From NCBI GenBank assembly GCA_964057225.1, contig OZ059898.1, forward strand, positions 12,028,001 to 12,092,000: a stretch of DNA of 64,000 bases, in the 5' to 3' direction. The notes beneath the pieces are model-generated. The model ran no database searches and was not told the DNA's origin. It worked only from the letters and a program-made list of their open reading frames with translations. Below, piece by piece: positions 20,543 through 40,700 of this stretch. The stretch comes from Auanema rhodensis. Taxonomy: Eukaryota; Animalia; Nematoda. The position numbers and the translations under genes were made by a program. Positions within the stretch are counted from its first letter, which is position 1. Each line of letters opens with the position of its first letter.

Positions 20543-21434
20543 CTATTCTCTGTCTGGGCATGGACAATAACCTCCATCGTCGCCGTGCTTTCCATTTGTT
20601 CCTGGAACGCCGTTTTGGCCGTTCTTTCCGCGGTGTCCTGGTTTTCCTTGCTTTCCTGGGTGTCCGACAGCTCCTCCTTCTCCATCAATTCCTGGTTCTC
20701 CATCTTTACCTGGAGCTCCAGCTGAACCACGTTCTCCGATTGGTCCCGGTCTTCCTGGTTCTCCATCTCTGTAGACAACTCCAACGCTGCCGGATTCTCC
20801 CTTTGGTCCTTCATGTCCAGCAGGTCCAGCTGGTCCTTCATCTCCAACCTCTCCTGGTTCTCCACGTGGTCCGACAGCTCCAGCTGGTCCACGTCTGCCA
20901 GGCTTTCCACTGCCACCTGATGGTCCTTGTTCTCCAGTTGGTCCTCTAAGTCCTGGTGGTCCACGTGGGCACTTGATGCATCCCTCTGGTTTCTCAAACT
21001 CAACAACAAGAATGATTCCGGGTAATCCGTTGATTCCATCAGTTCCATCAGGTCCATCTGGTCCTGGTTGTCCCTTATCTCCTCGTGGGCCTGGTGCTCC
21101 AGCGGGGCATCCTTGGGATTGTGGTGCACACTTACACTCTTCATCAGTATTTCTCTTGTGTCTTCCAATGAATTGACTGAAAGACTTTGATGTTCCAGTT
21201 CCGAGTGGATCAGCACGAATATCAAGGATGTAAGCCCATGAAGCTTCAGAAATAGTCTAAAGTACGAACCATAAAAACAAATTGTATGATGTTGCAAACC
21301 TTGAAATCATCCATTCCTAGGCTGATCTCATTCTCTAATCCATTAATGTCTCCAACAATCGAGCTGATTGAATACAAGGAGAACAGAACCGATACTGCGC
21401 CGAGGGCAGAAGAAACTCCAACCAAAGTTGTCAT
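20543..21434 (-). CDS. Nematode cuticle collagen, 2 exons (intron 21257-21299)
   Basis: N-terminal signal-anchor/Col_cuticle_N-like region, furin-type RHKR site, CKC...CPAG, interrupted Gly-X-Y tracts with CIKC, and C-terminal YCPCPDRE*. Confidence 0.97.
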
Positions 21435-25041: not shown

Positions 25042-26195
25042 ATGAGGGTAATTCTGGTTGTACTAGCTTTGATATATATCGTCGATGCATTCAACGAGTG
25101 GACCCCTGAAGCATATCCAAATCCACGTAAAAATCCAGGATTTAAGCAATGTGGTATGAGATCAGTCAGCAATATCTGTGATCCTGATCAGGTACATCTA
25201 TCTAATGCAACTATTCAATATCATATATATATATATCATTAGATATTGAGTGAATCTGATAGATATCGTCTGAATCATGAGCTTAGTCGTTTGACACGTA
25301 CAGGTCAAAATAAAGACTTCTGTGCTAGGAAAGGAATCGATGCTGTACTAGTTGTAGTTCCAGAAGTAAGTTTTTAATTCTTAATTTCACATTTTTCACT
25401 TTATTGACTAACGCACTGTGACGTTACTCTGAACATTAAAAACATTTTTTTTCTTTTTTTTTCAATTTTCTGATAACGCTATCAGAAGTCAAGAATCTAT
25501 ATCGAAGTAGAATTGACAGAAGAAAAAAAACTTCATCTAAATGATTTAGAGCGGAAGTAGTATGAAGAAATGATATTTGGTACAGTGTAAATTAATTTTT
25601 AAAAATAATTTTCACGTTATTGAATGTTAATTCAAATATGTTTTACGTCAACAATACCCATTTAATCTCATCAATCACGACATGATCGGTTGCTTTCACC
25701 CAATTCTTTTTCATTACGTTTTCTAGTCATTTCTCAACATAGGTGTTATAGGGATCCCAAAAGTTTACGGATGATTTAGCGAAGAAATGGAGTTTGGATA
25801 ATCAATGCCACAAGAGTGCTCTGTTCCTTTACTCATCAGATGAGCGTCGTGTTTATTATTCTGGTCAAGAGAATACTGGAATAAGTGAGAGATACATCAA
25901 TTCTATTTGTTGAAATTTCTATATTTATCAGATGCGGACGAGTTTGACGCTATTGCTTTCGCAGCTAAATCTCAACTATCTGCAGGTGAGTTCTGACATT
26001 TTATTTGAAAAAAACAACATACATGGTATGAATTACTTGTCACAAATTGAAGAATATAAGATGATATAACATTGGATAGCAGGTTCGAAATATGCCAGTC
26101 AATTGAAATGAATTTCAACCTTTTTTTCTTTTTTATATGCTGCTTTAACTCTAATTTTCTTTTAATTTTTTCAAACCGCTGCTTCAACAGTTTTT

Positions 26196-26274
<79 letters not shown>

Positions 26275-26522
26275 CAACTCCTAATTCTCTCTTCTCTTAT
26301 CTATCTTACAAACATATAAATACAATATAGACATGAAACATATAATTTTAAACATTTACAGGACATATTGTACCCGGATTGACAAATATCTTCAAGGAGC
26401 TCGGAAAAATCGTCAACCCTGATAAGGACGGACAAACGACACCTATTCCTAAAGCCGTTGCTACAAGCTCAGTATTTACTACTATACTACTTCTAATTAG
26501 TTACATATTACTATGGAACTAA
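25042..26522 (+). CDS. MOLO1/TPM-domain family protein with signal peptide and hydrophobic C-terminus, 5 exons
   Basis: TTTTCAG just before the ATG; signal peptide. WTPEAYPNPRKNPGFKQCGMRSVSNICDPDQILSESDRYRLNHEL matches the MOLO1-family N-terminal pattern. Continues FTDDLAKKWSLDNQCHKSALFLYSSDERRVY and ends SSVFTTILLLISYILLWN*. Confidence 0.85.
26199..26268. repeat. (TC)n microsatellite in the last intron of the MOLO1-like gene
   Basis: Pure TC run of ~35 units. Confidence 0.95.
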
Positions 26523-27718
26523 TTATATTTTAAGCAACTAAATCAAAAGAACATTAAAAAAAATGGAAATTACAGAGACGAGTAATTCGTGGCTTCAAAA
26601 AATCCTTCAACGACTTTCATCTCCAAGTTAGATAGTATAGTATCTGTGCACCTGTGATTTGTTCAACTTCAAAACTGTATTTATTGATTATTTTTTTCTT
26701 CAAAAATCTGTTTTTCAGCTTTGTGTGATAAGTATACTCATGAATCTTTCATTTCAAATGTTTAGAACAGATCATTCATTCCCTATTATTTGAAAAAAAA
26801 ACTTTTTTTTTTGTGTTTTGCGTATTCATTATTTCTATGTAAACTATGTGAATCTTGCCTTTGTCTCGTTAGAAGTGTGCGGTTTTTTGAGTTTTTATTT
26901 CCTTTTTTATCCAAAAAAAATTGAAAAAGAAACCTCATTTTTCATATTTTTCGTTATCAAACAGCATAAGCTACATGCAGCAAGTGGATTGTCATCATGA
27001 CTAGTTGAGCAGATTGTTGATTACGGGTTGCAACACTTATATTCTACCAATAACCTTTTTTTCTTATTTCAATGGCAAAACAACATAACAATGTACGATT
27101 TATCTGTTAGATGTCTTCGTTTCATCTTCAGGATGGATCGACGACAATGTGATGGAAACTTCTCTTGAGATTTCATGTAAAAGACTCATCCGTTTTTAGC
27201 GGCAGCGGCGAGAGGGAGGATGAGATGAAGGAGAAGGAGAAGAGGGGCGGGGCAATGAAATGAGTTCAAATGTTTAAAATACAACTTTGTGAAATGGGCA
27301 GAAGATATTTTTCGATTTCAAGACAACAAGCTCAACGAATGAAACTTGAATCTGTGTAGAATTGATGCTGACATGAATTTGGACGACAAAGGGAGAAAGG
27401 CTAAGAGATTCAGGAAACTAATGATCAGGATACATAGATGAAGCAAAGATTGTTGACTAATGAGTAGCAAAGCTTTTAAGAAAAATAATGAGATTCAGAT
27501 GAGACAGATACATCGCATAGGTAACAGGTATAGATAGTACAACTGAAAACTGGCGACGATCAGCAAAAGGCAAAAGATAAATGGATTTAAGAGATCATGA
27601 CCAATACTTTAAACAAGAAATTATTAAAAGAAATGAAAATATTATAAATAGTAGATGGTTAAATGGTTGTTCTCCAAACTTCTGTGTGCATTCAGAATAC
27701 GACAAAAAAAATTGTTTT

Positions 27719-28712
27719 TTAGCCGAACCTCAGCATGGGTAGATCTGCCGGTCCATTGATATTACGACTTAACTGAAAAAAAATTAAAAAATTAGTTATG
27801 AACGTTGAGATTGTGAATGATTGATTTGACATTATAAATGTATATTTATGCATGTTGAGATAGTTAGGTACCAAAAGCGGACAACATTGAACTTACAAAG
27901 TTTACTTATTTCATTTTAAAATTTATGAAAATTTCATAATTTTGGATGTAAGGTAGCTATTTTGGGAAGAGAATCTATTTAAAGTATTTTTTAATGTCCT
28001 ACTTCTCTTTTCCTAAATCTATTTCTATTTCTCTTTTCTGTTCTTTTTCACTTTTCAGAACATGCTAATATTCCATATTAGTACAAAAAAAATGTTAATA
28101 TTTACTTCGAAAAGACTTCAGAAGCAAAGCTTTTCGTGTTCAAAATATTTTGGCAATTGAAAGTGGGAAGTGACCATTTCCCTAAAGAATTTTACAGGGG
28201 GGACACTGAGAGAGTTTGAGACAGAGAGAGAGAAAAAAAAACAAAAAAAGTTGTTTATTTTAATAAAACTAAAATATTTTTTGTGTTTGAAGAGGTAGGG
28301 AGAGAATTGAACTTTTTAAATTATATGTTTAGAATGTAAATAAATAAACAAAATATTACCTCATTCCGACTAACGCGGTAGAATGCTGGTTGATAATCTG
28401 AATAGTCATCTTCATGCTGTCGGGCTGCTGTAATATAAGAGTAAAACTTGAAAACTCAGGCTTATTTGACAGTTTGAATTCAAATTTTAAACTAGCTTAT
28501 GATTGCAGGAAAAGAAAAATTCAAAAAAGGAACAGTATCAACGAATGTTTTAGAAAAGCTCATGATTGCAGGAAATGTGAAGAAGGAATAAACAACTAAC
28601 CTTGTACCAATAATCGTACATATTCTGAAGGTGGCAGACTAGCACAAATGGCTGAGGATATCAGAAGAACACAGACCAGAAACCGCAGCCAGTACCCTTG
28701 ATCGAAAGTCAT
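27719..28712 (-). CDS. RFamide (FLP-type) neuropeptide precursor, 67 aa, 3 exons
   Basis: Exons 28601-28712, 28360-28397 and 27719-27772, with canonical donors (GTTAGT, GTAATA), acceptors (TTCAG, TTTTCAG) and matching phases. Translation: MTFDQGYWLRFLVCVLLISSAICASLPPSEYVRLLVQDYQPAFYRVSRNELSRNINGPADLPMLRFG*. It has a signal peptide and a terminal RF-G amidation signal. Confidence 0.85.
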
Positions 28713-30410
28713 CTGAAGATTAAAAAAAAGTTAAATGAGACTATAAAACAGTCTGAATTAGTAAATCGAAATAAGAAGAAAAGATGTAAATTGAAATATA
28801 TTTTAAAAAAAAATTAAATAATGAATGAATGGATTGAATAAAGAAAAAAGATATTACAAAGCATTTCATATAATTGAGATAGAAAGATGTGAAAAATTCA
28901 AAATTATTAGTTAAAGTTATAACAGTTGATTTAATCATATTAGACTTCTTCATCTTCTACTTCATCATCTACTTGTTCCTCTTCTTTTTTATTGTTGTTC
29001 ATAGTGTTAATGAAGAGAAGAGATAGAAGATGATTTGAAGCATCTGAAGCATCTACATCCATACAAGTCTTCTTGTCTACGAATACTATGTACATATGTG
29101 TGTATGTGTGTGTGTGAGTGTTAGTCTATGTGTATGTATATAAGATAAACGACTGATCTTTCGTCATACAAATTTGTAAATTATTTAAAATACGGAGCAA
29201 GTTTTAAGAAATCAAATAAAGTAATCTATATGAATAATATATATTTATATATTTATATATAAAGATAAAGATAATTAGAATAAATTATTGCATTTTTTAG
29301 ATGAAATAAAGTTTTTAATGAATACAATATAAATATTTAGATATGTATAATATATAATAGACATACATGCATACATACATACATATATATATTAAAACAT
29401 ACTATTATATTAGTTTGTAATTCAAAAACTTCTATGAATATCCGAGTATTTTCAAAAATAAAAATATGATCGGGGGTTCGTCGGAAATTTATTGGATTAG
29501 CTTTGAAAGATTGAACTCAAAAGTAATAAAAAAAAAAGAACTTGTGATGATGGTGAGGCTTTCTATCTCGTTGACGTAAATAGCACATTGCGTATTAAGC
29601 TGTGCGTGGGACAAGTTCAAGAAAATGCCTGAAGCTCTGGACGTCTTGTCCTAGCTGTATCTGATGATCAGGCTGATGATGACGACACAATGTAATGAAT
29701 AAGAACGTTTTTATCATCTTTTAAGCTTAGTGATGGGCAGCCAACAAGAAACATTCAGTAATCTGATGGCTGCAGTTTCTACTGGAGCGAAGTAGATTAA
29801 CGTCTTCTGTTGTCGTTTACGTTGCCATCGTTGCCGTGCTCATCGACAACCTGCTACTTACTGGCAGTTATCTTTGATGGAACAACGTCTGACCAAAGCT
29901 GCTCGACGCTGTACATCCGGAGCAGCATTTGAAGTAGCGCATGTGACTTGCAAGCAAAGTTGACCGAAGAAAGGTGAAGCTAATAAGCTTGAAAGGTCAT
30001 ATAGCAAACTGACAATATTTGAACGAAAAAGGCAGCTTATCAACAGATACAACATGTGTATGTGCATAGACAAGGCATTAAACCAACATTAAAATAAAGC
30101 ATTAAAACCCTTAAAGGACATAATAAATGAAATAAATTAACGATCAGATTACTTTTCAGAATATTATAGTGTTTTTTTGATTTTCGATCTACTTATAGAT
30201 ATGCTAAGATGACGTGAAAAATGATCATTAAAGCACAGATTTAGTTAAAATGAACATATTTCGAAAGATAAATGTTTGGTTCAATCAACTTGCTTGTAAA
30301 AGCTTATAGAGCAAGGTGGATGATTGACTAAAAAATTGAAAAACACAGGATAGGACGTCGAACATGTACAGATGGATATACATATACATATATGTATATA
30401 TAAAGATCTC

Positions 30411-30466
30411 TTTCTTTCTCTCCCTCTCTCTTTCTCTCTCCCTCTCTCTCCCTCTCTCTCTCCTTC

Positions 30467-30497
<31 letters not shown>

Positions 30498-30570
30498 CCC
30501 TCTCTCTCTTTCTCTCTCTCTATCTCTTTCTCTTTCTCTATCTCTCTCTATCTCTCTCTCTATCTCTCTT
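30411..30570. repeat. Compound (TC)n microsatellite
   Basis: ~160 nt interrupted TC/TCC/TCTA tract; explains the SLSLSL ORFs. Confidence 0.95.
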
Positions 30571-33500
30571 TATGGAAAATTATCTGGAGAAAAGCAAAGA
30601 TACTCCTCTTCTTGTTTCCACGTAATTTTAAAATTTTGAAACGTCTTTTGTATTCGCTGGTTTTGGTATGTTTTTCAAGAACTGCAGCAGCTTCATCTAA
30701 CATAAAACTGTCATGAAAAGAGAACAGGAAGACTATGTAAACATGAAGCATATTCTGATTTCGTAAATAAAAATAAAAATAACATCTGAATGTGATATAA
30801 GGATTCAAATACGTGAATCTAGGAAGTATAGTATTGAAAGCAGGGAAAATAAAAACGTTTCCCTTTCCTCCCTCTCCCGCTCTCTCTATCTCTCTCTATC
30901 TCTTTCTCTCTCTCTTTTTCTTCTTAACTCTATTGCTTTCTTTTTATAGAGAGAAAACAAAACAAATGCATAACAGTATGTATTTTATGCGTTGAAAATG
31001 AATTTTAACAGCAAATTTCACGAAGAAAGTGAAACATTGAGATCAGAACGAAAACTGATGGACAGATGAGAAAATTGGTTTTGAACCAATGGAGTTGAAG
31101 CAATTCGATTCAAATATGCTCCAGTGAGATGGCACAAGGACAATAAGTTATTGGGAAGTTCTTAGTCAATTGCCTCCATATCTGACACATGTATTAAGCA
31201 TAAAGATACACGTCATCTAAACTCTTGGATTTTACCATAAAACGAAATTTCGAAAGTGGAAGTTAAAGGAAAGGAAGCTGGATAGCTGGATGAATAACTT
31301 AACGAAGTAATGTAGAAGGAAGAATCTCAATGGAAGCTTTTTAGCATAAAAAAAGAAATGTTAACTTATGTTATGAAATATAAAAAGTTTTAAGGTTTTA
31401 AAGTTTTATGGTTATAACTATCTTCACTAAATTCACTCATCAATGATCAAAAAGATGAGACAAAAGATCAAATTTTCCAATACGGTTGCGACAATTAAGG
31501 TTTTGCTTCAGCGGAACCAAGTGCACATCGACAAATATTGAGGAAGTCAACAAAAAAACAGAATAATTTGATTGTCAATTTCCTAATTATATTAGACTCA
31601 TTGTAAAATAAATAATTATAAGGATAATTGAGAAAAGAGCTGAGGTCAAACAGACTTTTGTACGACGAACTTGAGTTTATACCCATAACGGTGAAGCTGG
31701 AGAACTTCTGTTCTCGTCAACACTTCGACCATAACCCCCGCGAGCTTTTCCGCAACTTTTTTTTGTTTCCACAATGTTGCTTTTTGAGAACATGTGTGAA
31801 AGCATTAGAGTAAAGCATAGTTATTGGGGTCTTATCTTCAGACTGAACTTGAAATCAAAGGAGAGAGCAGAGAGAGGGTTATCCATGGATTCTTTTAATA
31901 TATGTTTCTGCGTCAGAATCTGCTTAAACAACTCTTCCGGCTTCGTCTCCCCATAATTTATGCACTTGGCCTGAGGCAATTCCGAGGAAAGGTGCAGCAA
32001 AGATAATAAATTATTCCTCCTTCATCACTATATCTAGCTTTTCTAAATAAGGTATATGATATAATCGTTGTAACTACGTTCCCTATTTACAAGAGATTAA
32101 AGAGAAGGGAGATAATAATAATCAGGAGATAACGAGAGAGAGGGAGGGAATAAAAGAGAGAGAGAGAGAACAAGTGAAGACGGAAAGAAATAAGTATATA
32201 AGTAATTCACATCTTACCGGAATGATTGGGAAAAAGGGAATAATACTCATTACGTATTCAAGCTTTTCACTTGAAATTTAGCATTATCTTCAAAAAAAAT
32301 AATGAGAAGCTGGAATGAGAAAGTTTTTTTCATGCCGGGAACTCAAAAGGGAAAGAATGGTTATAGTCCTTTCTGAGTATATGGGTTAATTGTTCAACTC
32401 GGCTTCTTCTATAGTTTTTCTGGTTCAGCCACAAAACAACCAAATTACAGATCCTATTCTCCGTCCACTCACTCCCTCACTCCTCTATCTCTTCCTTTCT
32501 TTTTCTCTTTCTTAAAGATGTTAGAAAAAGAATCAGCCTTAGATATGGAACAATGACGAGATGCTTCCGGGCGGCCAAGAATAGCCTAAGACCACATCAG
32601 AAAACAGTCAACGTCATTATGAACAATGACTAAGTGATGTGTAGATTCTGCTATGCTGCAAAAGATGAAACATTAAAGTGCTGGATAACCATATGAAAAA
32701 CAATTATCATAATACTTTATGGAAGAAAACTTAATCATAAGAACATTTGCTTTGATGTAATTCTGCTTAAATAGAAGAATATTGTGTGATGTCGTTGAAA
32801 ATTCATTTTATTAGTTAAGTATTCTATATTAAAAGAAAACTGGATGAATGAGCGAAAAGGTTAAGACAGCATGCAGATGAAAAGAAGCGACACGGATGTG
32901 CTATTCAATGAAGAAGATCACTTAGACTTGATGGTTGATGGAAGCATCAAGCTTTTGCTTTATCTATATGTATAAGTGATATTTTTGATTTAATTCATCG
33001 TTATATAGTATCATTTACGAAATTCAGATATTTCCTCAGAAAGCAGGAGTAATTATGGTTAAATGCGATCATTTACATTTTTCAGCTGTATTCTAATTTC
33101 ATGAGAAATGGTGAGTTTTCACAAATGAATTCAAGACGGCAATGAGATTTTAATAAAATATAAACCCTTTGAAAGGTAATTATGAATATATAATTAGTAT
33201 TAATATTATATTTTTAAAAAAATATAAAAATATAATATTCATACTAATTATATAAACTTATTCTTAATTATACTATATTGAGATATGTACATATTACACA
33301 TACATAAGCGAAATATGGATTACGTGTGATTGACGTGAAATTTTACGTGAAATTGGCATACAGTTTTTTCACGTAAAACAAAAAAAAACTATTCATTTAA
33401 TGATATCTAGATGAGAATGAATGGTTGCATATGTATGTGTTTCGACTAAATTTATACGATTCTGTAATCTTTTTCGTTTTGCTTTCATTCCATCCCTTAA

Positions 33501-35984: not shown

Positions 35985-36346
35985 AATTTAAGTTTGCTTT
36001 TCATCTTTTTCTTAATAAAATATACAAAATCTTATTAAAATATATTGATAAGAGCATTAAGACGAGTGTGTTGCGTCAAAGAAAATTAAGAAAAACCTCC
36101 AACGTAGCTATACGTAGATGAAAACATTTGTGTAAATGAGCTGCTTATATATAATGGTCCTTGAGAATCAACGATTGAATTACTTTATCAATCTACGGAG
36201 ACAGAAATTACGAAAAAACTGTTGGAAAAACAAAATTATCCGAATTAGGCTTGTAGATTAATATATTTGAAAATATATTTGAATGATCAGAATGATAAGA
36301 AAACATGAAAAAATGAGACAGCAAAGGTCTTTAAATAGAAAGACTA

Positions 36347-36499
<153 letters not shown>

Positions 36500-37675
36500 G
36501 TGGAGAAGAGAGAAAGAGGGGGAGAGAAGAGAGAGAGAGAAATGAAGAATAAGAGAAACAATTTTTTGGTATGAAAAGCATTATTGCAGGCTAATGTCCA
36601 CATCCTGATCAAACATCTTCCGGTCAAGTATAAAGAGAAAAAGTCAGTTTTGCTTATTAGGAAGTGAGCTTAAAAGGGTCAAAATGAAAGAGCAAATTAT
36701 CTAAAGATATTGTAGAACGGAGAGAATTACAGAGAAATGCTCAGATGAAAGGATTGTTCGAGAAGACGGAAAGAAGAAGGAGTGGGAGTGTGAAAGCTGC
36801 AAGTGACATGTAGTCTGTCTAGCATTTGGACTACAAATCTTCCAGTTGAATTGATTCAACTCGTAATTCACACAAAAGCTAAATAAGCAAGTAGTAATCA
36901 CATAAAACAGCAATATATCTGACCAAGTTCGACGTTAAATCAGTAGTAGCTAACAAACAGCCTGCCCGGGAGCTGTTCAATGAAAGGAGGAGCATGAGAG
37001 TAGTCGCACCCGTGTTGTCGGTGTGAATGCGGAGTAGAACATGAAAAAGTTAAAAGCAATAGAGTCATGAAGTGAGAATAAGGATGATGGCGTACATTAC
37101 ATGTCGAAGCTTGTGCTGTGTTTCAACTATTGGACGCGTCAAGTGATATCTTCTTAGGACAGATATAAGAAAAAGAAATAAATTAATTTTTGTGGTTTTG
37201 CCAATTCTGCAATAGGATGCACATCGCTAACGTTAAATGCTGTATGAAAAGCTTCATTCTTGATACTTCTAGACAATGGTCGTTGCCAGATGATTCTAAG
37301 CTCAGGTCAATGACCAGAAGAACACTCTAGTTGACGTGTAACTTCTTAACATTTTCATTTAAAAGTATAATGAAGATATATCAGTAAATGAGATAAAAAC
37401 GTGAATGAAAGTGATTAGTCAAGCCAGAATCACTCTCCCACTCCCATTGAGAAGAAAAAAACGGACAGGCACAGAATCTTTAAGTCTTGCTTGATTGAGA
37501 AGGAAGTATTCTTGAATGCGCAAAAGATGGATGATCTGTAATGGATAAAAAGTGAATGTTTCTTTAATATTCATCAAAGTTCAAGATTTTTGAAGGTTCA
37601 TATCGATGATGAGCTCAAAAATGTGTAAAGAAAACGAAAAAAAATCGTTGAAGTGTGAGATACGACGATCAGTGT

Positions 37676-37733: not shown

Positions 37734-40700
37734 GAGGCTATGACATGAGAACTGGCAACTAAGTGAGAAGAGCCCAACTTTATTAGTCTTATAATGAATT
37801 TAGGATAGCTTGCTCGTCGTTCACATTCTAAGATTCTGATATGGAAAAGCCAGGAGCAGCCAAAAAATGAAGAGAAAAAGAGAAAGTGAGCTACTGAACG
37901 TTTCATTCGATAACAGAGTTCTGAAGTAAAGTGAAAATGTTGATTATCCGTATCTTACAGCGGTCACGGCGACGACGATGTCGGTGTTGACGCCCCCACA
38001 TCAGTAGAAAGAGTGGAAAAAGTCAGGGCGGACGAAAAAGGAGAGAAGACGAAGTTGTGCGGAGCAGTGTGAAAGGAAGGAGGAGCGGGGGTTAAGAGCA
38101 GCGGTGTTAAAGAGAGCTATGTGTTATCTATTCCCAAAATAACATTAGAGACACGTGTGACTTGAGACAAGATATATAACTTGTCCCGTGTGTAGCTTTA
38201 TTTGGAAACTGCTGATTCTATTTTCAGAATAAATTTGACGTCACAAACAAATTGTCGCATCCCTCCTACACTTTTGTCTATTTTTCTTGTTTGATTCCTG
38301 ATTTGCAGCTTTAGCAGCATTCATATATATACATACTAAATGTGTACCCGACTGAAAAAAAAGGCTTGTCTACAGTTAAAGTTGAAAAAAATGAATAAGA
38401 AATAGATAAATAAGACAAGACGAAAAACATAAATGAAAGAGCAACAGAATAGAAAAAGCTGAATAAAATGACAATCATATGTATTAAGGGATATGAAAAT
38501 CTCTGTGATGACTCTAAGAGAGAATATGTTTATTCATAGCATATATGTATGTATAAACATATAAGATAATACCCAGTAACTCCATTTTTAATTGAAAAGC
38601 TAATGCTTCATCAACACACAAAAAAAGTTGTAACAACGGTCATTTCTGTGTGTGCAATGTGCATGTGCATGTGTATATATGGCTGCTGAAACTACTTTTC
38701 ACTTCTTGTTCTTGTTCTTCTTCTATTTTTCTATAACTTGTTTATGTACTAATATGTACATATATACTTATACATATAATATAAAGCTAAGAAAATACTA
38801 TTCATTAGCAAGTACGTACTTTTCTTTAGAAAATAATAATATTCTTTTGTATATGATACTATGAAATAGACGAGAAAGACCTTATCAACTTCTTAAGTTC
38901 ATTTATATATTTGTGTATTGGATCTGGAAGCTAATGAAGAAAAAATAAAAAAAATATGAGGTAAAAATTCTTTTTTTTTTTTCAACGTAACGTAGATCAA
39001 GAAGAAGAAAATATTTTTTTGAAGTTCAAAGTTTAGCCGGTTTATGATAAACGACACAGTGTTATGTTCCGTTAAAAGCAATGTATGATTTTTGAATTTC
39101 GCACATCCGTTGGTAAAGCCGGAAACTCGGATGAGTGTCTAAGGTGATTGAATTATCAACAGAAAAATAATGTTAGATGAAAACAAATTTATAAATGTAA
39201 ATGACAGAGATTTTATTACATTTTCGAACTATAAAGTCATTTTCTATATAATGATGATGATGATGATGATGAAAAGAGAGAAAATTAATAAAATATAAAT
39301 AGTTAGCTACATGCATGGATATTGCAAATGACGTCTTCATATCTTTCCTCATTTCTTTCTTTCTTTTTTTTTTTTGAATAATTTTCAAATTTAGTTTGTA
39401 GTACATCGATCATTAAATTAAAAACTTTTATTTTTTCAACACATATTCCAGGAATATTTCAAACAAACAAAAAACTTCAGATTTTCAGGACAAAATGTTG
39501 AGAGACATACTCCTGGATATTCCTATATTCACTCTGGCACGGCGTCACTAAGCATAAGTTCGAATGATTGATGAGGTGAAAGTTTAATCAGCTCGGCATG
39601 CTTAATCTACAAAGTCATTCACATATTTTGAATATGTATTGCCTTACTTTTGGCAACATTTGAACAGTTTGAATCAACTATATTGAAGCTTTGTTATAGT
39701 GAAAAGCCATGTAATGGATGGTCAAATGTGAGCACTATCACATAGCTTCATCATCATTTTCAGCTGCTCTAATGTAAAATTATGATATTTTCGATTAGAT
39801 ATCAGTCTATAGATGGAATAATAAATTTTTTTAATATATAATTTTCAAATATTCGTAAAGGCACGACGATTGCCAAAACAATACAGAAAGAATACGGTGT
39901 CATTGAAGCGAAGAGACTATCTCGACAATTTTTTGTTCAAAAAAGCTGCTTTGTTTTCAAAATTTTTGTCTCAAACCTTTTTGGCACTTTTCATAAATTT
40001 AGAACCGCTGTAGCTTCAAGTGACAAATAAAGCAGCTTTTTTCAACTTTTAAATATACATATACTATATATATATATATAGTTAGCCTATTACTAGTTTT
40101 AGAAAAAAAGTTTAAACATGCTGAGCATATACCAGCTTATAATTAAAAAATTAGAGTTGGTATACTGTAGTTGAATTGTCAGGAAAAGTTGAATATGATA
40201 CCAACTGTATACAGATTATTATCTGGTTTTTAACACAAATTATTAAGTTTTTTACATATGTCAAGCCTATTTTTCTATTTTTCTTTCGAATTTCAGATAA
40301 TTTTGAATAAAAATTGAATAAATGTACTTTATTATTCAATAAATATTTCCTTTATAATTATTATGAGTTTTATATAAACAATTTCAACCTTATAAATATA
40401 CTTTTTTAGTTAAATTTGATGAAATACCATTTTCTTTTAACTGAATTTCAAACTAAAACACATCAATTACTTGAATTTCACAGCCTAGTTCAGCTATATC
40501 ACTTTAACTTGTTCACCGTTGGAGGAATTTAGATGAAAACTTACAGCATGAAGTTTAAAAGAAAGAAAGAAATTTTATTTAACTAAGGGAGGATATAAAT
40601 TCAATTTTAAATGTGTTTTCACATTTATATCTTTTAAAAACAACATTACTTAACATTACTACTATTCAAATACTGATTTTATGATTTCAAAGGCCAATGA

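What the first reader, a model, noticed from the sequence alone, without database searches (positions are those of the whole stretch)
27719..28712. Cryptic RFamide neuropeptide gene encoding NINGPADLPMLRF-amide
Seen: three tiny exons, none in the ORF track, splice in frame to a 67-aa precursor with a signal peptide, monobasic SR sites (VSR-NELSR-NING) and a single C-terminal ...DLPMLRFG-stop. Established: a C-terminal Gly is converted to an amide, and RFamides (FLPs) are the major nematode neuropeptide family. The PMLRFamide ending does not match the FLP-1 to FLP-34 signatures as I recall them; the nearest are FLP-13 PLIRFa, FLP-18 PGVLRFa and FLP-26 LxLRFa. Inference: a possibly undescribed or unannotated FLP with its own receptor. 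This is the best candidate for a new signalling system in the window.
Basis: partly seen in the sequence, partly recalled or inferred. Interest (0 to 1): 0.85.

Follow-up and report, generated by a model that had tools for sequence, protein, structure and literature searches.

The report
Unannotated nlp-53 neuropeptide gene, RFamide form
The hidden three-exon gene is real and expressed, but it is this nematode's copy of the named, little-studied C. elegans neuropeptide gene nlp-53, here ending in RF-amide instead of RY-amide, so it is not a new signalling system.

Summary
Transcript contigs from four RNA runs show an SL1-trans-spliced, three-exon minus-strand mRNA. Exon 1 is 28712-28601, exon 2 is 28427-28360 and exon 3 starts at 27772, with the stop at 27719.

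It has a signal peptide, no dibasic sites, a conserved RVSR cleavage site and a C-terminal ...PADLPMLRFG-stop.

It is not a new family. An exhaustive phmmer search found a Nippostrongylus brasiliensis hypothetical protein (55% identity, E 9e-14) and the Caenorhabditis cluster containing C. elegans NLP-53 (E 1e-5).

Orthology is supported by:
- the same architecture;
- both introns at identical positions and phases in all three species;
- a convergent MOLO1-domain neighbour gene, as in C. elegans.

Caenorhabditis and Diploscapter end in LPMLRYG. This genome and N. brasiliensis end in LPM[L/F]RFG.

Three points remain of modest interest:
- The gene is absent from the protein collections searched.
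- The published NLP survey scored nlp-53 as absent from all nine parasites examined.
- The phylum-wide FLP catalogue lacks this motif.

The receptor and function of nlp-53 are unknown. Verdict: new member of a known kind, modest interest.

The parts
28713..28714 (-). AG of the SL1 trans-splice acceptor, directly before the start codon
   Evidence: contigs of X1, X2 and X4 continue beyond 28714 with CAAACTTG(G) on the + strand. This is CCAAGTTTG on the RNA strand, the end of SL1. One search shows the genome reads ...aatcttc there instead.
28601..28712 (-). Exon 1 (coding residues 1-37 plus one base; phase-1 donor G|gttagt). It holds the signal peptide (residues 1-24, 28641-28712) and the start of the conserved LPxS[DE]YVR[FL]L helix.
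   Evidence: joint 28601/28427; hydrophobic core at residues 11-24; helices 4-24 and 28-43. L26, P28, Y31, V32 and R33 are invariant.
28428..28600 (-). Intron 1 (173 nt, phase 1)
   Evidence: skipped in all four contigs with zero depth; same position and phase in C. elegans and N. brasiliensis.
28360..28427 (-). Exon 2 (68 nt; residues 38-60, ending ...FYRVSRNE). It contains the conserved RVSR cleavage site.
   Evidence: pieces 28360-28427 in all four runs; (R55, V56 and R58 invariant).
27773..28359 (-). Intron 2 (587 nt, phase 0, after RNE)
   Evidence: joint 27772/28360; same position (after RNE/RNQ) and phase in the two other species.
27719..27772 (-). Exon 3 coding part: LSRNINGPADLPMLRFG plus the TAA stop (27719-27721). 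The amidation-donor Gly is the last residue.
27089..27718 (-). 3' UTR, about 630 nt. The longest contig ends near 27089, 10-15 nt after a GATAAA at 27099-27104 that could be a variant poly(A) signal. The end point is inferred.
   Evidence: the X3 contig extends 311 nt past 27400.
25042..25889 (+). Neighbouring MOLO1-domain gene (at least three exons), convergent with the peptide gene. Used as microsynteny evidence; not part of the peptide gene.
   Evidence: Pfam PF17175 on three consecutive exons, profile positions 1-30, 30-76 and 91-121; collinear tblastn matches to the MOLO1 gene that lies tail-to-tail with nlp-53 in C. elegans.

Best explanation
This is the orthologue of the C. elegans neuropeptide-like protein gene nlp-53, in a nematode whose sequence is closer to Nippostrongylus than to Caenorhabditis. 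It was missed because its exons are tiny.

Shown:
- The gene is transcribed, SL1-trans-spliced and spliced into a 77-aa open reading frame.
- The product has a signal peptide, a conserved helical N-terminal pro-region, a disordered linker, a conserved RVxR site and a C-terminal LPM[L/F]R[F/Y]-Gly-stop.

Inferred from the established nematode processing pathway:
- Signal peptidase cuts after about residue 24.
- A proprotein convertase (EGL-3/KPC-2 type) cuts after RVSR (R58), and possibly also after LSR (R63, with Arg at P6).
- A carboxypeptidase E-type enzyme (EGL-21) removes the Arg.
- The terminal Gly is converted to an amide.
- The products would be NELSRNINGPADLPMLRF-NH2 (18 aa) and/or NINGPADLPMLRF-NH2 (13 aa), which would act on a still unidentified peptide GPCR.

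In Caenorhabditis and Diploscapter the same peptide ends in RY-amide. In this lineage it ends in RF-amide, so by motif it would be called an FLP although by descent it is nlp-53.
For: Gene and transcript:
- Spliced, SL1-bearing transcript contigs in four RNA runs, with introns at zero depth.
- ORF and frame.

Homology:
- phmmer of the 77-aa product against 1.84 billion representatives returned only two hits. P0001 has 55% identity, E 9e-14. P0002 has 41% identity, E 1.2e-5.
- P0001 is an N. brasiliensis hypothetical protein. The P0002 cluster contains C. elegans Q9XXJ3, named Neuropeptide-Like Protein.
- That sequence is entry 53 of the C. elegans NLP query list of McKay et al. 2022 (PMC8764417 supplement). 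The locus is on chromosome X, as is nlp-53.
- A profile search added C. briggsae, C. auriculariae, C. angaria and Diploscapter pachys.
- Alignment A2 shows invariant L26, P28, Y31, V32, R33, R55, V56, R58, R75 and G77.

Gene structure and position:
- Both introns are at the same codon position and phase in the window, C. elegans and N. brasiliensis.
- A convergent MOLO1-domain neighbour is present in both the window and C. elegans.

Other:
- The AF2 model shows a helix over the conserved pro-region, with the rest disordered.
- Protein-language-model neighbours of NLP-53 are small peptide-hormone precursors. This is a lead only.
Against: - No peptide-level evidence was obtained: cleavage, amidation and secretion are inferred.
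- No receptor or phenotype for nlp-53 was found in the literature searched.
- The N-terminal helix is more conserved than the amidated peptide. C. angaria keeps only RYG at the C-terminus, so the RF/RY-amide peptide may not be the only or main functional product.
- The tissue of expression is unknown; the RNA runs are coded and undescribed.
- N. brasiliensis shares no neighbour with the window within 10 kb.
Confidence: 0.87

Rival explanations
1. A truly new FLP gene with no named counterpart and its own new receptor system.
For: The PMLRF, LPMLRF and PMFRFG strings are absent from the phylum-wide FLP sequence file of McCoy et al. 2024 and from full-text literature. The word-index protein searches were blank.
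Against: There is significant full-length similarity to C. elegans NLP-53 and its relatives. Intron positions and phases are identical. The MOLO1 neighbour is conserved.
Confidence: 0.03
2. The functional product is mainly the conserved N-terminal pro-region (LPxS[DE]YVR[FL]LIQ...). It would act either as a second, non-amidated peptide released at the Arg about 15 residues after the signal peptide, or as a sorting helix. The C-terminal RF/RY-amide would be secondary.
For: The N-terminal block is the best conserved part of alignment A2. It is intact in C. angaria, whose C-terminal peptide has diverged to ...NNAFFRYG. It is predicted helical with the highest pLDDT outside the signal peptide. McCoy et al. 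2024 describe similar conserved helical pro-domains in FLP precursors.
Against: The Arg that would release it is replaced by Gln in N. brasiliensis. R-[FY]-G-stop is invariant in all seven sequences, which argues that amidation of the C-terminus matters. This reading does not exclude the main explanation.
Confidence: 0.08
3. A small secreted protein that is not a neuropeptide, for example an unprocessed secreted or antimicrobial-type product.
For: There are no dibasic cleavage sites. Tissue of expression was not determined. Nothing is published on nlp-53 function.
Against: The conserved RVxR site and the invariant R-[FY]-Gly-stop are hallmarks of amidated neuropeptide precursors. There are no cysteines after the signal peptide and no cationic or amphipathic tail. 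WormBase/NCBI name the C. elegans orthologue a neuropeptide-like protein.
Confidence: 0.02

Closest known systems
C. elegans nlp-53 (UniProt Q9XXJ3, NP_510281; chromosome X) and its Caenorhabditis and Diploscapter orthologues
   Same: Length is 75-78 aa against 77 here. Shared features are the signal peptide, the LPS[DE]YVR[FL]LIQ block, the RVxR site, a single C-terminal LPMLR[FY]G-stop peptide, three exons with identical intron positions and phases, and a convergent MOLO1-domain neighbour.
   Different: The ending is RF-Gly here and RY-Gly there. The peptide body is NELSRNINGPAD- here and NQGAGSVSLDSLAS- there. An extra monobasic site (LSR) is present here. Identity is only 42%.
Nippostrongylus brasiliensis hypothetical protein WKY14228.1 (P0001)
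   Same: This is the closest relative found (55-58% identity). It has the same ...PADLPM[L/F]RFG-stop RFamide ending, the same intron positions, and a basic residue 12-13 residues before the C-terminal Gly.
   Different: Phe replaces Leu before the Arg. The Arg after the N-terminal helix is replaced by Gln. No shared neighbours were seen within 10 kb.
Nematode FMRFamide-like peptides (flp-1 to flp-34), especially FLP-13 (PLIRFa, with C-terminal D[ET]T[MV]LRFG peptides in some clades), FLP-18 (PGVLRFa; GPMMRFG in Trichuris) and FLP-26
   Same: A predicted C-terminal RFamide preceded by a hydrophobic residue and a proline. It works like an FLP by motif and might cross-activate promiscuous RFamide receptors.
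   Different: There is no sequence match to any catalogued flp sequelogue. The precursor carries one peptide, uses monobasic sites only, and descends from an nlp gene.
Luqin-type RYamides (LURY-1/NLP-72) and NPY/NPF-type peptides (FLP-34, FLP-33, FLP-27)
   Same: The family has R-[FY]-amide endings, and NLP-53 proper is an RYamide.
   Different: The two-cysteine motif that defines luqin precursors is absent. The RxR[FY]amide motif of NPY/F peptides is absent; the ending here is M-L-R-F.

Membership tests
nlp-53 orthologue group | Significant full-length sequence similarity to C. elegans NLP-53 | tested here: met
   (E 1.2e-5 to the Caenorhabditis cluster and 9e-14 to N. brasiliensis, in a library of 1.84 billion). 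(profile). (identity of P0003 with entry 53 of the NLP list).
nlp-53 orthologue group | Same precursor architecture: signal peptide, LPxS[DE]YVR block, RVxR site, single C-terminal LPMxR[FY]G-stop | tested here: met
   Alignments A1 and A2.
nlp-53 orthologue group | Conserved exon-intron structure | tested here: met
   Intron 1 is phase 1 after ...L[IV]Q. Intron 2 is phase 0 after RN[EQ]. This holds in the window, L001 and L002.
nlp-53 orthologue group | Conserved genomic position | tested here: met
   A convergent MOLO1-domain gene lies downstream in both the window and C. elegans. It was not seen within 10 kb in N. brasiliensis.
FMRFamide-like peptides (FLP), by motif | C-terminal Arg-Phe followed by a Gly amidation donor | tested here: met
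   The ...MLRFG-TAA ending in the spliced transcript.
FMRFamide-like peptides (FLP), by motif | The peptide is actually cleaved and amidated | not testable with these tools
   Needs mass spectrometry.
Named flp genes flp-1 to flp-34 | Match to a catalogued flp prepropeptide signature or motif | tested here: not met
   No PMLRF, LPML(R), DLPM, GPADL(P) or PMFRFG in a matching context in the McCoy et al. 2024 sequence file. Filarial and other FLP-13 sequences read are unrelated outside RFG.
Luqin/RYamide | Two conserved cysteines C-terminal to the peptide in the precursor | tested here: not met
   The peptide is the C-terminus, and there are no Cys residues after the signal peptide. The definition is from PMC11004728.
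NPY/NPF | RxR[FY]amide C-terminus on a long peptide that directly follows the signal peptide | tested here: not met
   The ending is M-L-R-F, with no Arg at position -4.

The most novel reading that the evidence does not exclude
nlp-53 may not be a recent Caenorhabditis invention, nor lost in parasites as the published survey scored it. It may be an older RF/RY-amide system of rhabditine (clade V) nematodes that BLAST-based surveys miss because its exons are tiny and its sequence diverges fast. In the lineage of this genome and Nippostrongylus it has switched from RY-amide to RF-amide. It would then be a hidden 'FLP' with an orphan receptor, and its conserved N-terminal helix may carry a second function.
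Probability: 0.4. Interest if true: 0.45.

Novelty: new member of a known kind. Interest (0 to 1): 0.3.

Why it matters
- It corrects a gene model and adds a missing neuropeptide gene to this genome.
- Together with the N. brasiliensis hit, it shows that nlp-53 exists outside Caenorhabditis and Diploscapter. McKay et al. 2022 listed it among 13 C. elegans nlp genes absent from all nine parasites examined.
- The RY-amide to RF-amide change within one orthologue group shows that the motif-based FLP/NLP split does not follow descent.
- It gives two natural ligand variants for deorphanising the nlp-53 receptor.
- It does not reveal a new signalling system.

Tried and rejected
- Word-index protein searches with the exon-3 ORF and with the 77-aa product found nothing. 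Only the exhaustive phmmer search found relatives.
- Full-text searches for PMLRF, PMLRY and PMFRF and for accession numbers gave nothing relevant.
- From memory I considered flp-24, flp-26, flp-21 and flp-13. I dropped them because the catalogue has no matching sequence and filarial FLP-13 is unrelated.
- As-FLP-35 of Ascaris is a different peptide...WLMRL-NH2.
- The supplement of Beets et al. 2023 and that of the Haemonchus peptidomics paper are not held as text.
- Species identification failed. An Atlas search with a neighbouring exon was uninformative, the runs are coded, and the Rfam scan of the window was blank.
- I infer, without having tested it, that the organism is a rhabditine nematode nearer to Strongylida than to Caenorhabditis. 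The basis is 55-58% against 42% identity, including the signal peptide.
- No paralogue of the gene is present in the window.
- I could not tell whether this genome has any deposited annotation. 'Unannotated' here means absent from the protein collections searched.

Full report
**What is in the sequence**

On the minus strand an ATG at 28712 opens a 112-nt exon ending at a G|gttagt donor. A 68-nt exon (28427-28360) and a 54-nt terminal coding exon (27772-27719, TAA stop) follow. None of the exons gives an ORF of 60 aa, so they are invisible to a default ORF list.

**Transcript evidence**

One search found four RNA runs of a single study that hold a quarter of the sampled words of 27400-29100. 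When laid on the stretch, each run gives one contig. Each contig covers exactly the three exons and the 3' flank at 100% identity and leaves both introns at zero depth. The joints are 28601/28427 and 28360/27772, both with GT..AG ends on the RNA strand.

The first is not. The acceptor in use is 30 nt upstream of the predicted 28397 and in the same frame. The protein therefore has 77 residues instead of 67 (row 28427).

Three contigs continue beyond 28714 with letters that are the reverse complement of CCAAGTTTG. With the AG at 28714-28713 this reads ...CCAAGTTTGAG, which from established knowledge is the 3' end of the nematode SL1 spliced leader. The genome itself reads otherwise at that place. 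The mRNA is therefore SL1-trans-spliced directly onto the start codon. That fixes the 5' end and confirms the organism is a nematode.

The longest contig ends near 27089, shortly after a GATAAA at 27099-27104. This implies a 3' UTR of about 630 nt; the end point is inferred.

**The product**

- Residues 11-24 form a hydrophobic core after a charged N-region. A small-residue cleavage context follows (...AICA|SL).
- There are no Lys residues and no dibasic sites. Arg occurs at positions 10, 33, 40, 55, 58, 63 and 75.
- RVSR (55-58) is an RxxR site. LSR (63) has Arg at P6, which fits the monobasic rule.
- The protein ends ...NINGPADLPMLRFG-stop.

**What it is related to**

Two word-index searches of 5.8 billion proteins were blank. 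The exact protein and near-identical ones are therefore not in that collection.

The exhaustive phmmer search of 1.84 billion cluster representatives gave exactly two hits:

| Hit | Length | Identity | E-value | Ending | Source |
|---|---|---|---|---|---|
| P0001 | 79 aa | 55% | 9e-14 | ...TPADLPMFRFG | hypothetical protein of Nippostrongylus brasiliensis |
| P0002 | 75 aa | 41% | 1.2e-5 | ...SLASLPMLRYG | Caenorhabditis cluster that includes C. elegans Q9XXJ3/NP_510281, 'Neuropeptide-Like Protein' |

The C. elegans sequence (P0003) is letter for letter entry 53 in the list of C. elegans NLP queries in the supplement of McKay et al. 2022 (PMC8764417). Entry 54 in that list is the TRH-like NLP-54, so the numbering is the gene number. 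The locus lies on chromosome X, where nlp-53 alleles are listed (PMC10077061).

A profile search with the alignment added C. briggsae CBG07405, C. auriculariae, C. angaria and Diploscapter pachys.

**Orthology tests**

1. Architecture. In the seven-sequence alignment A2 the invariant positions are L26, P28, Y31, V32, R33 (the LPxS[DE]YVR block right after the signal peptide), R55, V56, R58 (the RVxR site) and R75, G77.
2. Gene structure. In the window, in C. elegans (L001) and in N. brasiliensis (L002), intron 1 splits the codon after ...L[IV]Q in phase 1. Intron 2 falls in phase 0 after RN[EQ].
3. Position. In C. elegans nlp-53 lies tail-to-tail with a MOLO1-domain gene.
   - In the window three exons at 25042-25889 on the opposite strand match consecutive parts of Pfam MOLO1.
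   - They are collinear with the C. elegans gene.
   - They lie downstream of the peptide gene and are convergent with it.

All tests are met, so I file the gene as the nlp-53 orthologue.

**How it most likely works**

Shown: transcription, trans-splicing, splicing, the ORF, and conservation of the signal peptide, the RVxR site and the R-[FY]-G-stop.

Inferred from the established nematode neuropeptide pathway (EGL-3/KPC-2 convertase, EGL-21 carboxypeptidase, amidating enzymes):
- The precursor enters the secretory pathway.
- It is cleaved after RVSR and the Arg is trimmed.
- The terminal Gly is amidated, giving NELSRNINGPADLPMLRF-NH2.

That site has a counterpart (Lys with Arg at P6) only in N. 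brasiliensis and none in Caenorhabditis or Diploscapter. The 17-20-residue form is therefore the conserved product, and the short form is a possible lineage-specific one.

The receptor is unknown. nlp-53 occurs in the full text of only one paper of the library, as an allele in a strain list. It is not mentioned in the main text of the system-wide peptide-GPCR screen.

The AF2 model built on alignment A2 has low overall confidence (mean pLDDT 67). It shows a helix over residues 28-43, the conserved block, and disorder downstream. This resembles the conserved helical pro-domains that McCoy et al. 2024 describe in FLP precursors.

That block is better conserved than the amidated peptide. C. angaria keeps it intact while its C-terminus has drifted to ...NNAFFRYG. 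A second function for the pro-region, as a sorting element or a second peptide, is therefore a live rival that does not exclude the main reading.

**Comparison with what is known**

By motif the predicted peptide is an RFamide and would be classed as an FLP. By descent it is an nlp gene whose Caenorhabditis and Diploscapter members are RYamides.

Its motif is absent from the 2143-gene FLP sequence file of McCoy et al. 2024. The nearest look-alikes there are C-terminal ...D[ET]T[MV]LRFG peptides of some FLP-13 precursors and a ...GPMMRFG in a Trichuris FLP-18. These share nothing else with this precursor.

It lacks the two-cysteine motif of luqin precursors and the RxR[FY] motif of NPY/NPF peptides.

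**Novelty**

The gene family is known and named, so this is not a new signalling system.

New, at a modest level:
- The gene is not in the protein collections searched.
- McKay et al. 2022 list nlp-53 among 13 C. elegans nlp genes 'absent from all parasites examined', with an empty row for the nine species. This gene and the N. brasiliensis protein show that the family extends beyond Caenorhabditis.
- In these two species the ending has changed from RY-Gly to RF-Gly.

**Limits**

- I could not identify the organism. Similarity, including in the signal peptide, places it nearer to Nippostrongylus than to Caenorhabditis. This is inference.
- I could not search other nematode genomes, and I had no peptide-level data.
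- The contigs would not show a rare isoform using the 28397 acceptor.
- The earlier notes of this scan gave no information that bears on this gene.

Noticed in passing
window 25042-25889 (+): A MOLO1-domain gene (modulator of levamisole receptor family, Pfam PF17175) with at least three exons. It is convergent with the peptide gene and collinear with the C. elegans gene next to nlp-53.
   Followed up: partly
L002:11733-20947 (N. brasiliensis CP130737.1): Downstream of the N. brasiliensis nlp-53 orthologue lie a thrombospondin type-1 repeat protein and a 679-aa rhodopsin-type GPCR (7tm_1/Srsx). A peptide GPCR within 8 kb of an orphan peptide gene is a lead for the receptor, but it may be coincidence. 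No counterpart was seen in the window.
   Followed up: no
alignment A2, row P0010 (Caenorhabditis angaria): The C-terminal peptide has diverged (...NNEFLLNNAFFRYG) while the N-terminal LPSDYVRFLIQSAR block is unchanged. The pro-region is under tighter constraint than the amidated peptide.
   Followed up: partly
window 25972-26277, 30364-30716, 36258-36627: Long (GA)n/(TC)n dinucleotide arrays. They appear as ERER.../SLSL... runs in the ORF list. One lies between the MOLO1 gene and the 3' end of the peptide gene.
   Followed up: no
PMC11658156 supplement 3 (FLP-13 entries): FLP-13 precursors of Plectus, Ditylenchus and ascarids carry an extra C-terminal ...D[ET]T[MV]LRFG peptide unlike the PLIRFG copies. 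The filarial FLP-13 sequences listed lack it.
   Followed up: no
window 37944-37991 (-) and 20575-20622 (+): These are the only other R[FY]G-stop or R[FY]G-basic endings in the six-frame translation of the window. Neither has transcript or homology support, and the second lies in the wrong frame of the collagen region. They are probably chance.
   Followed up: no
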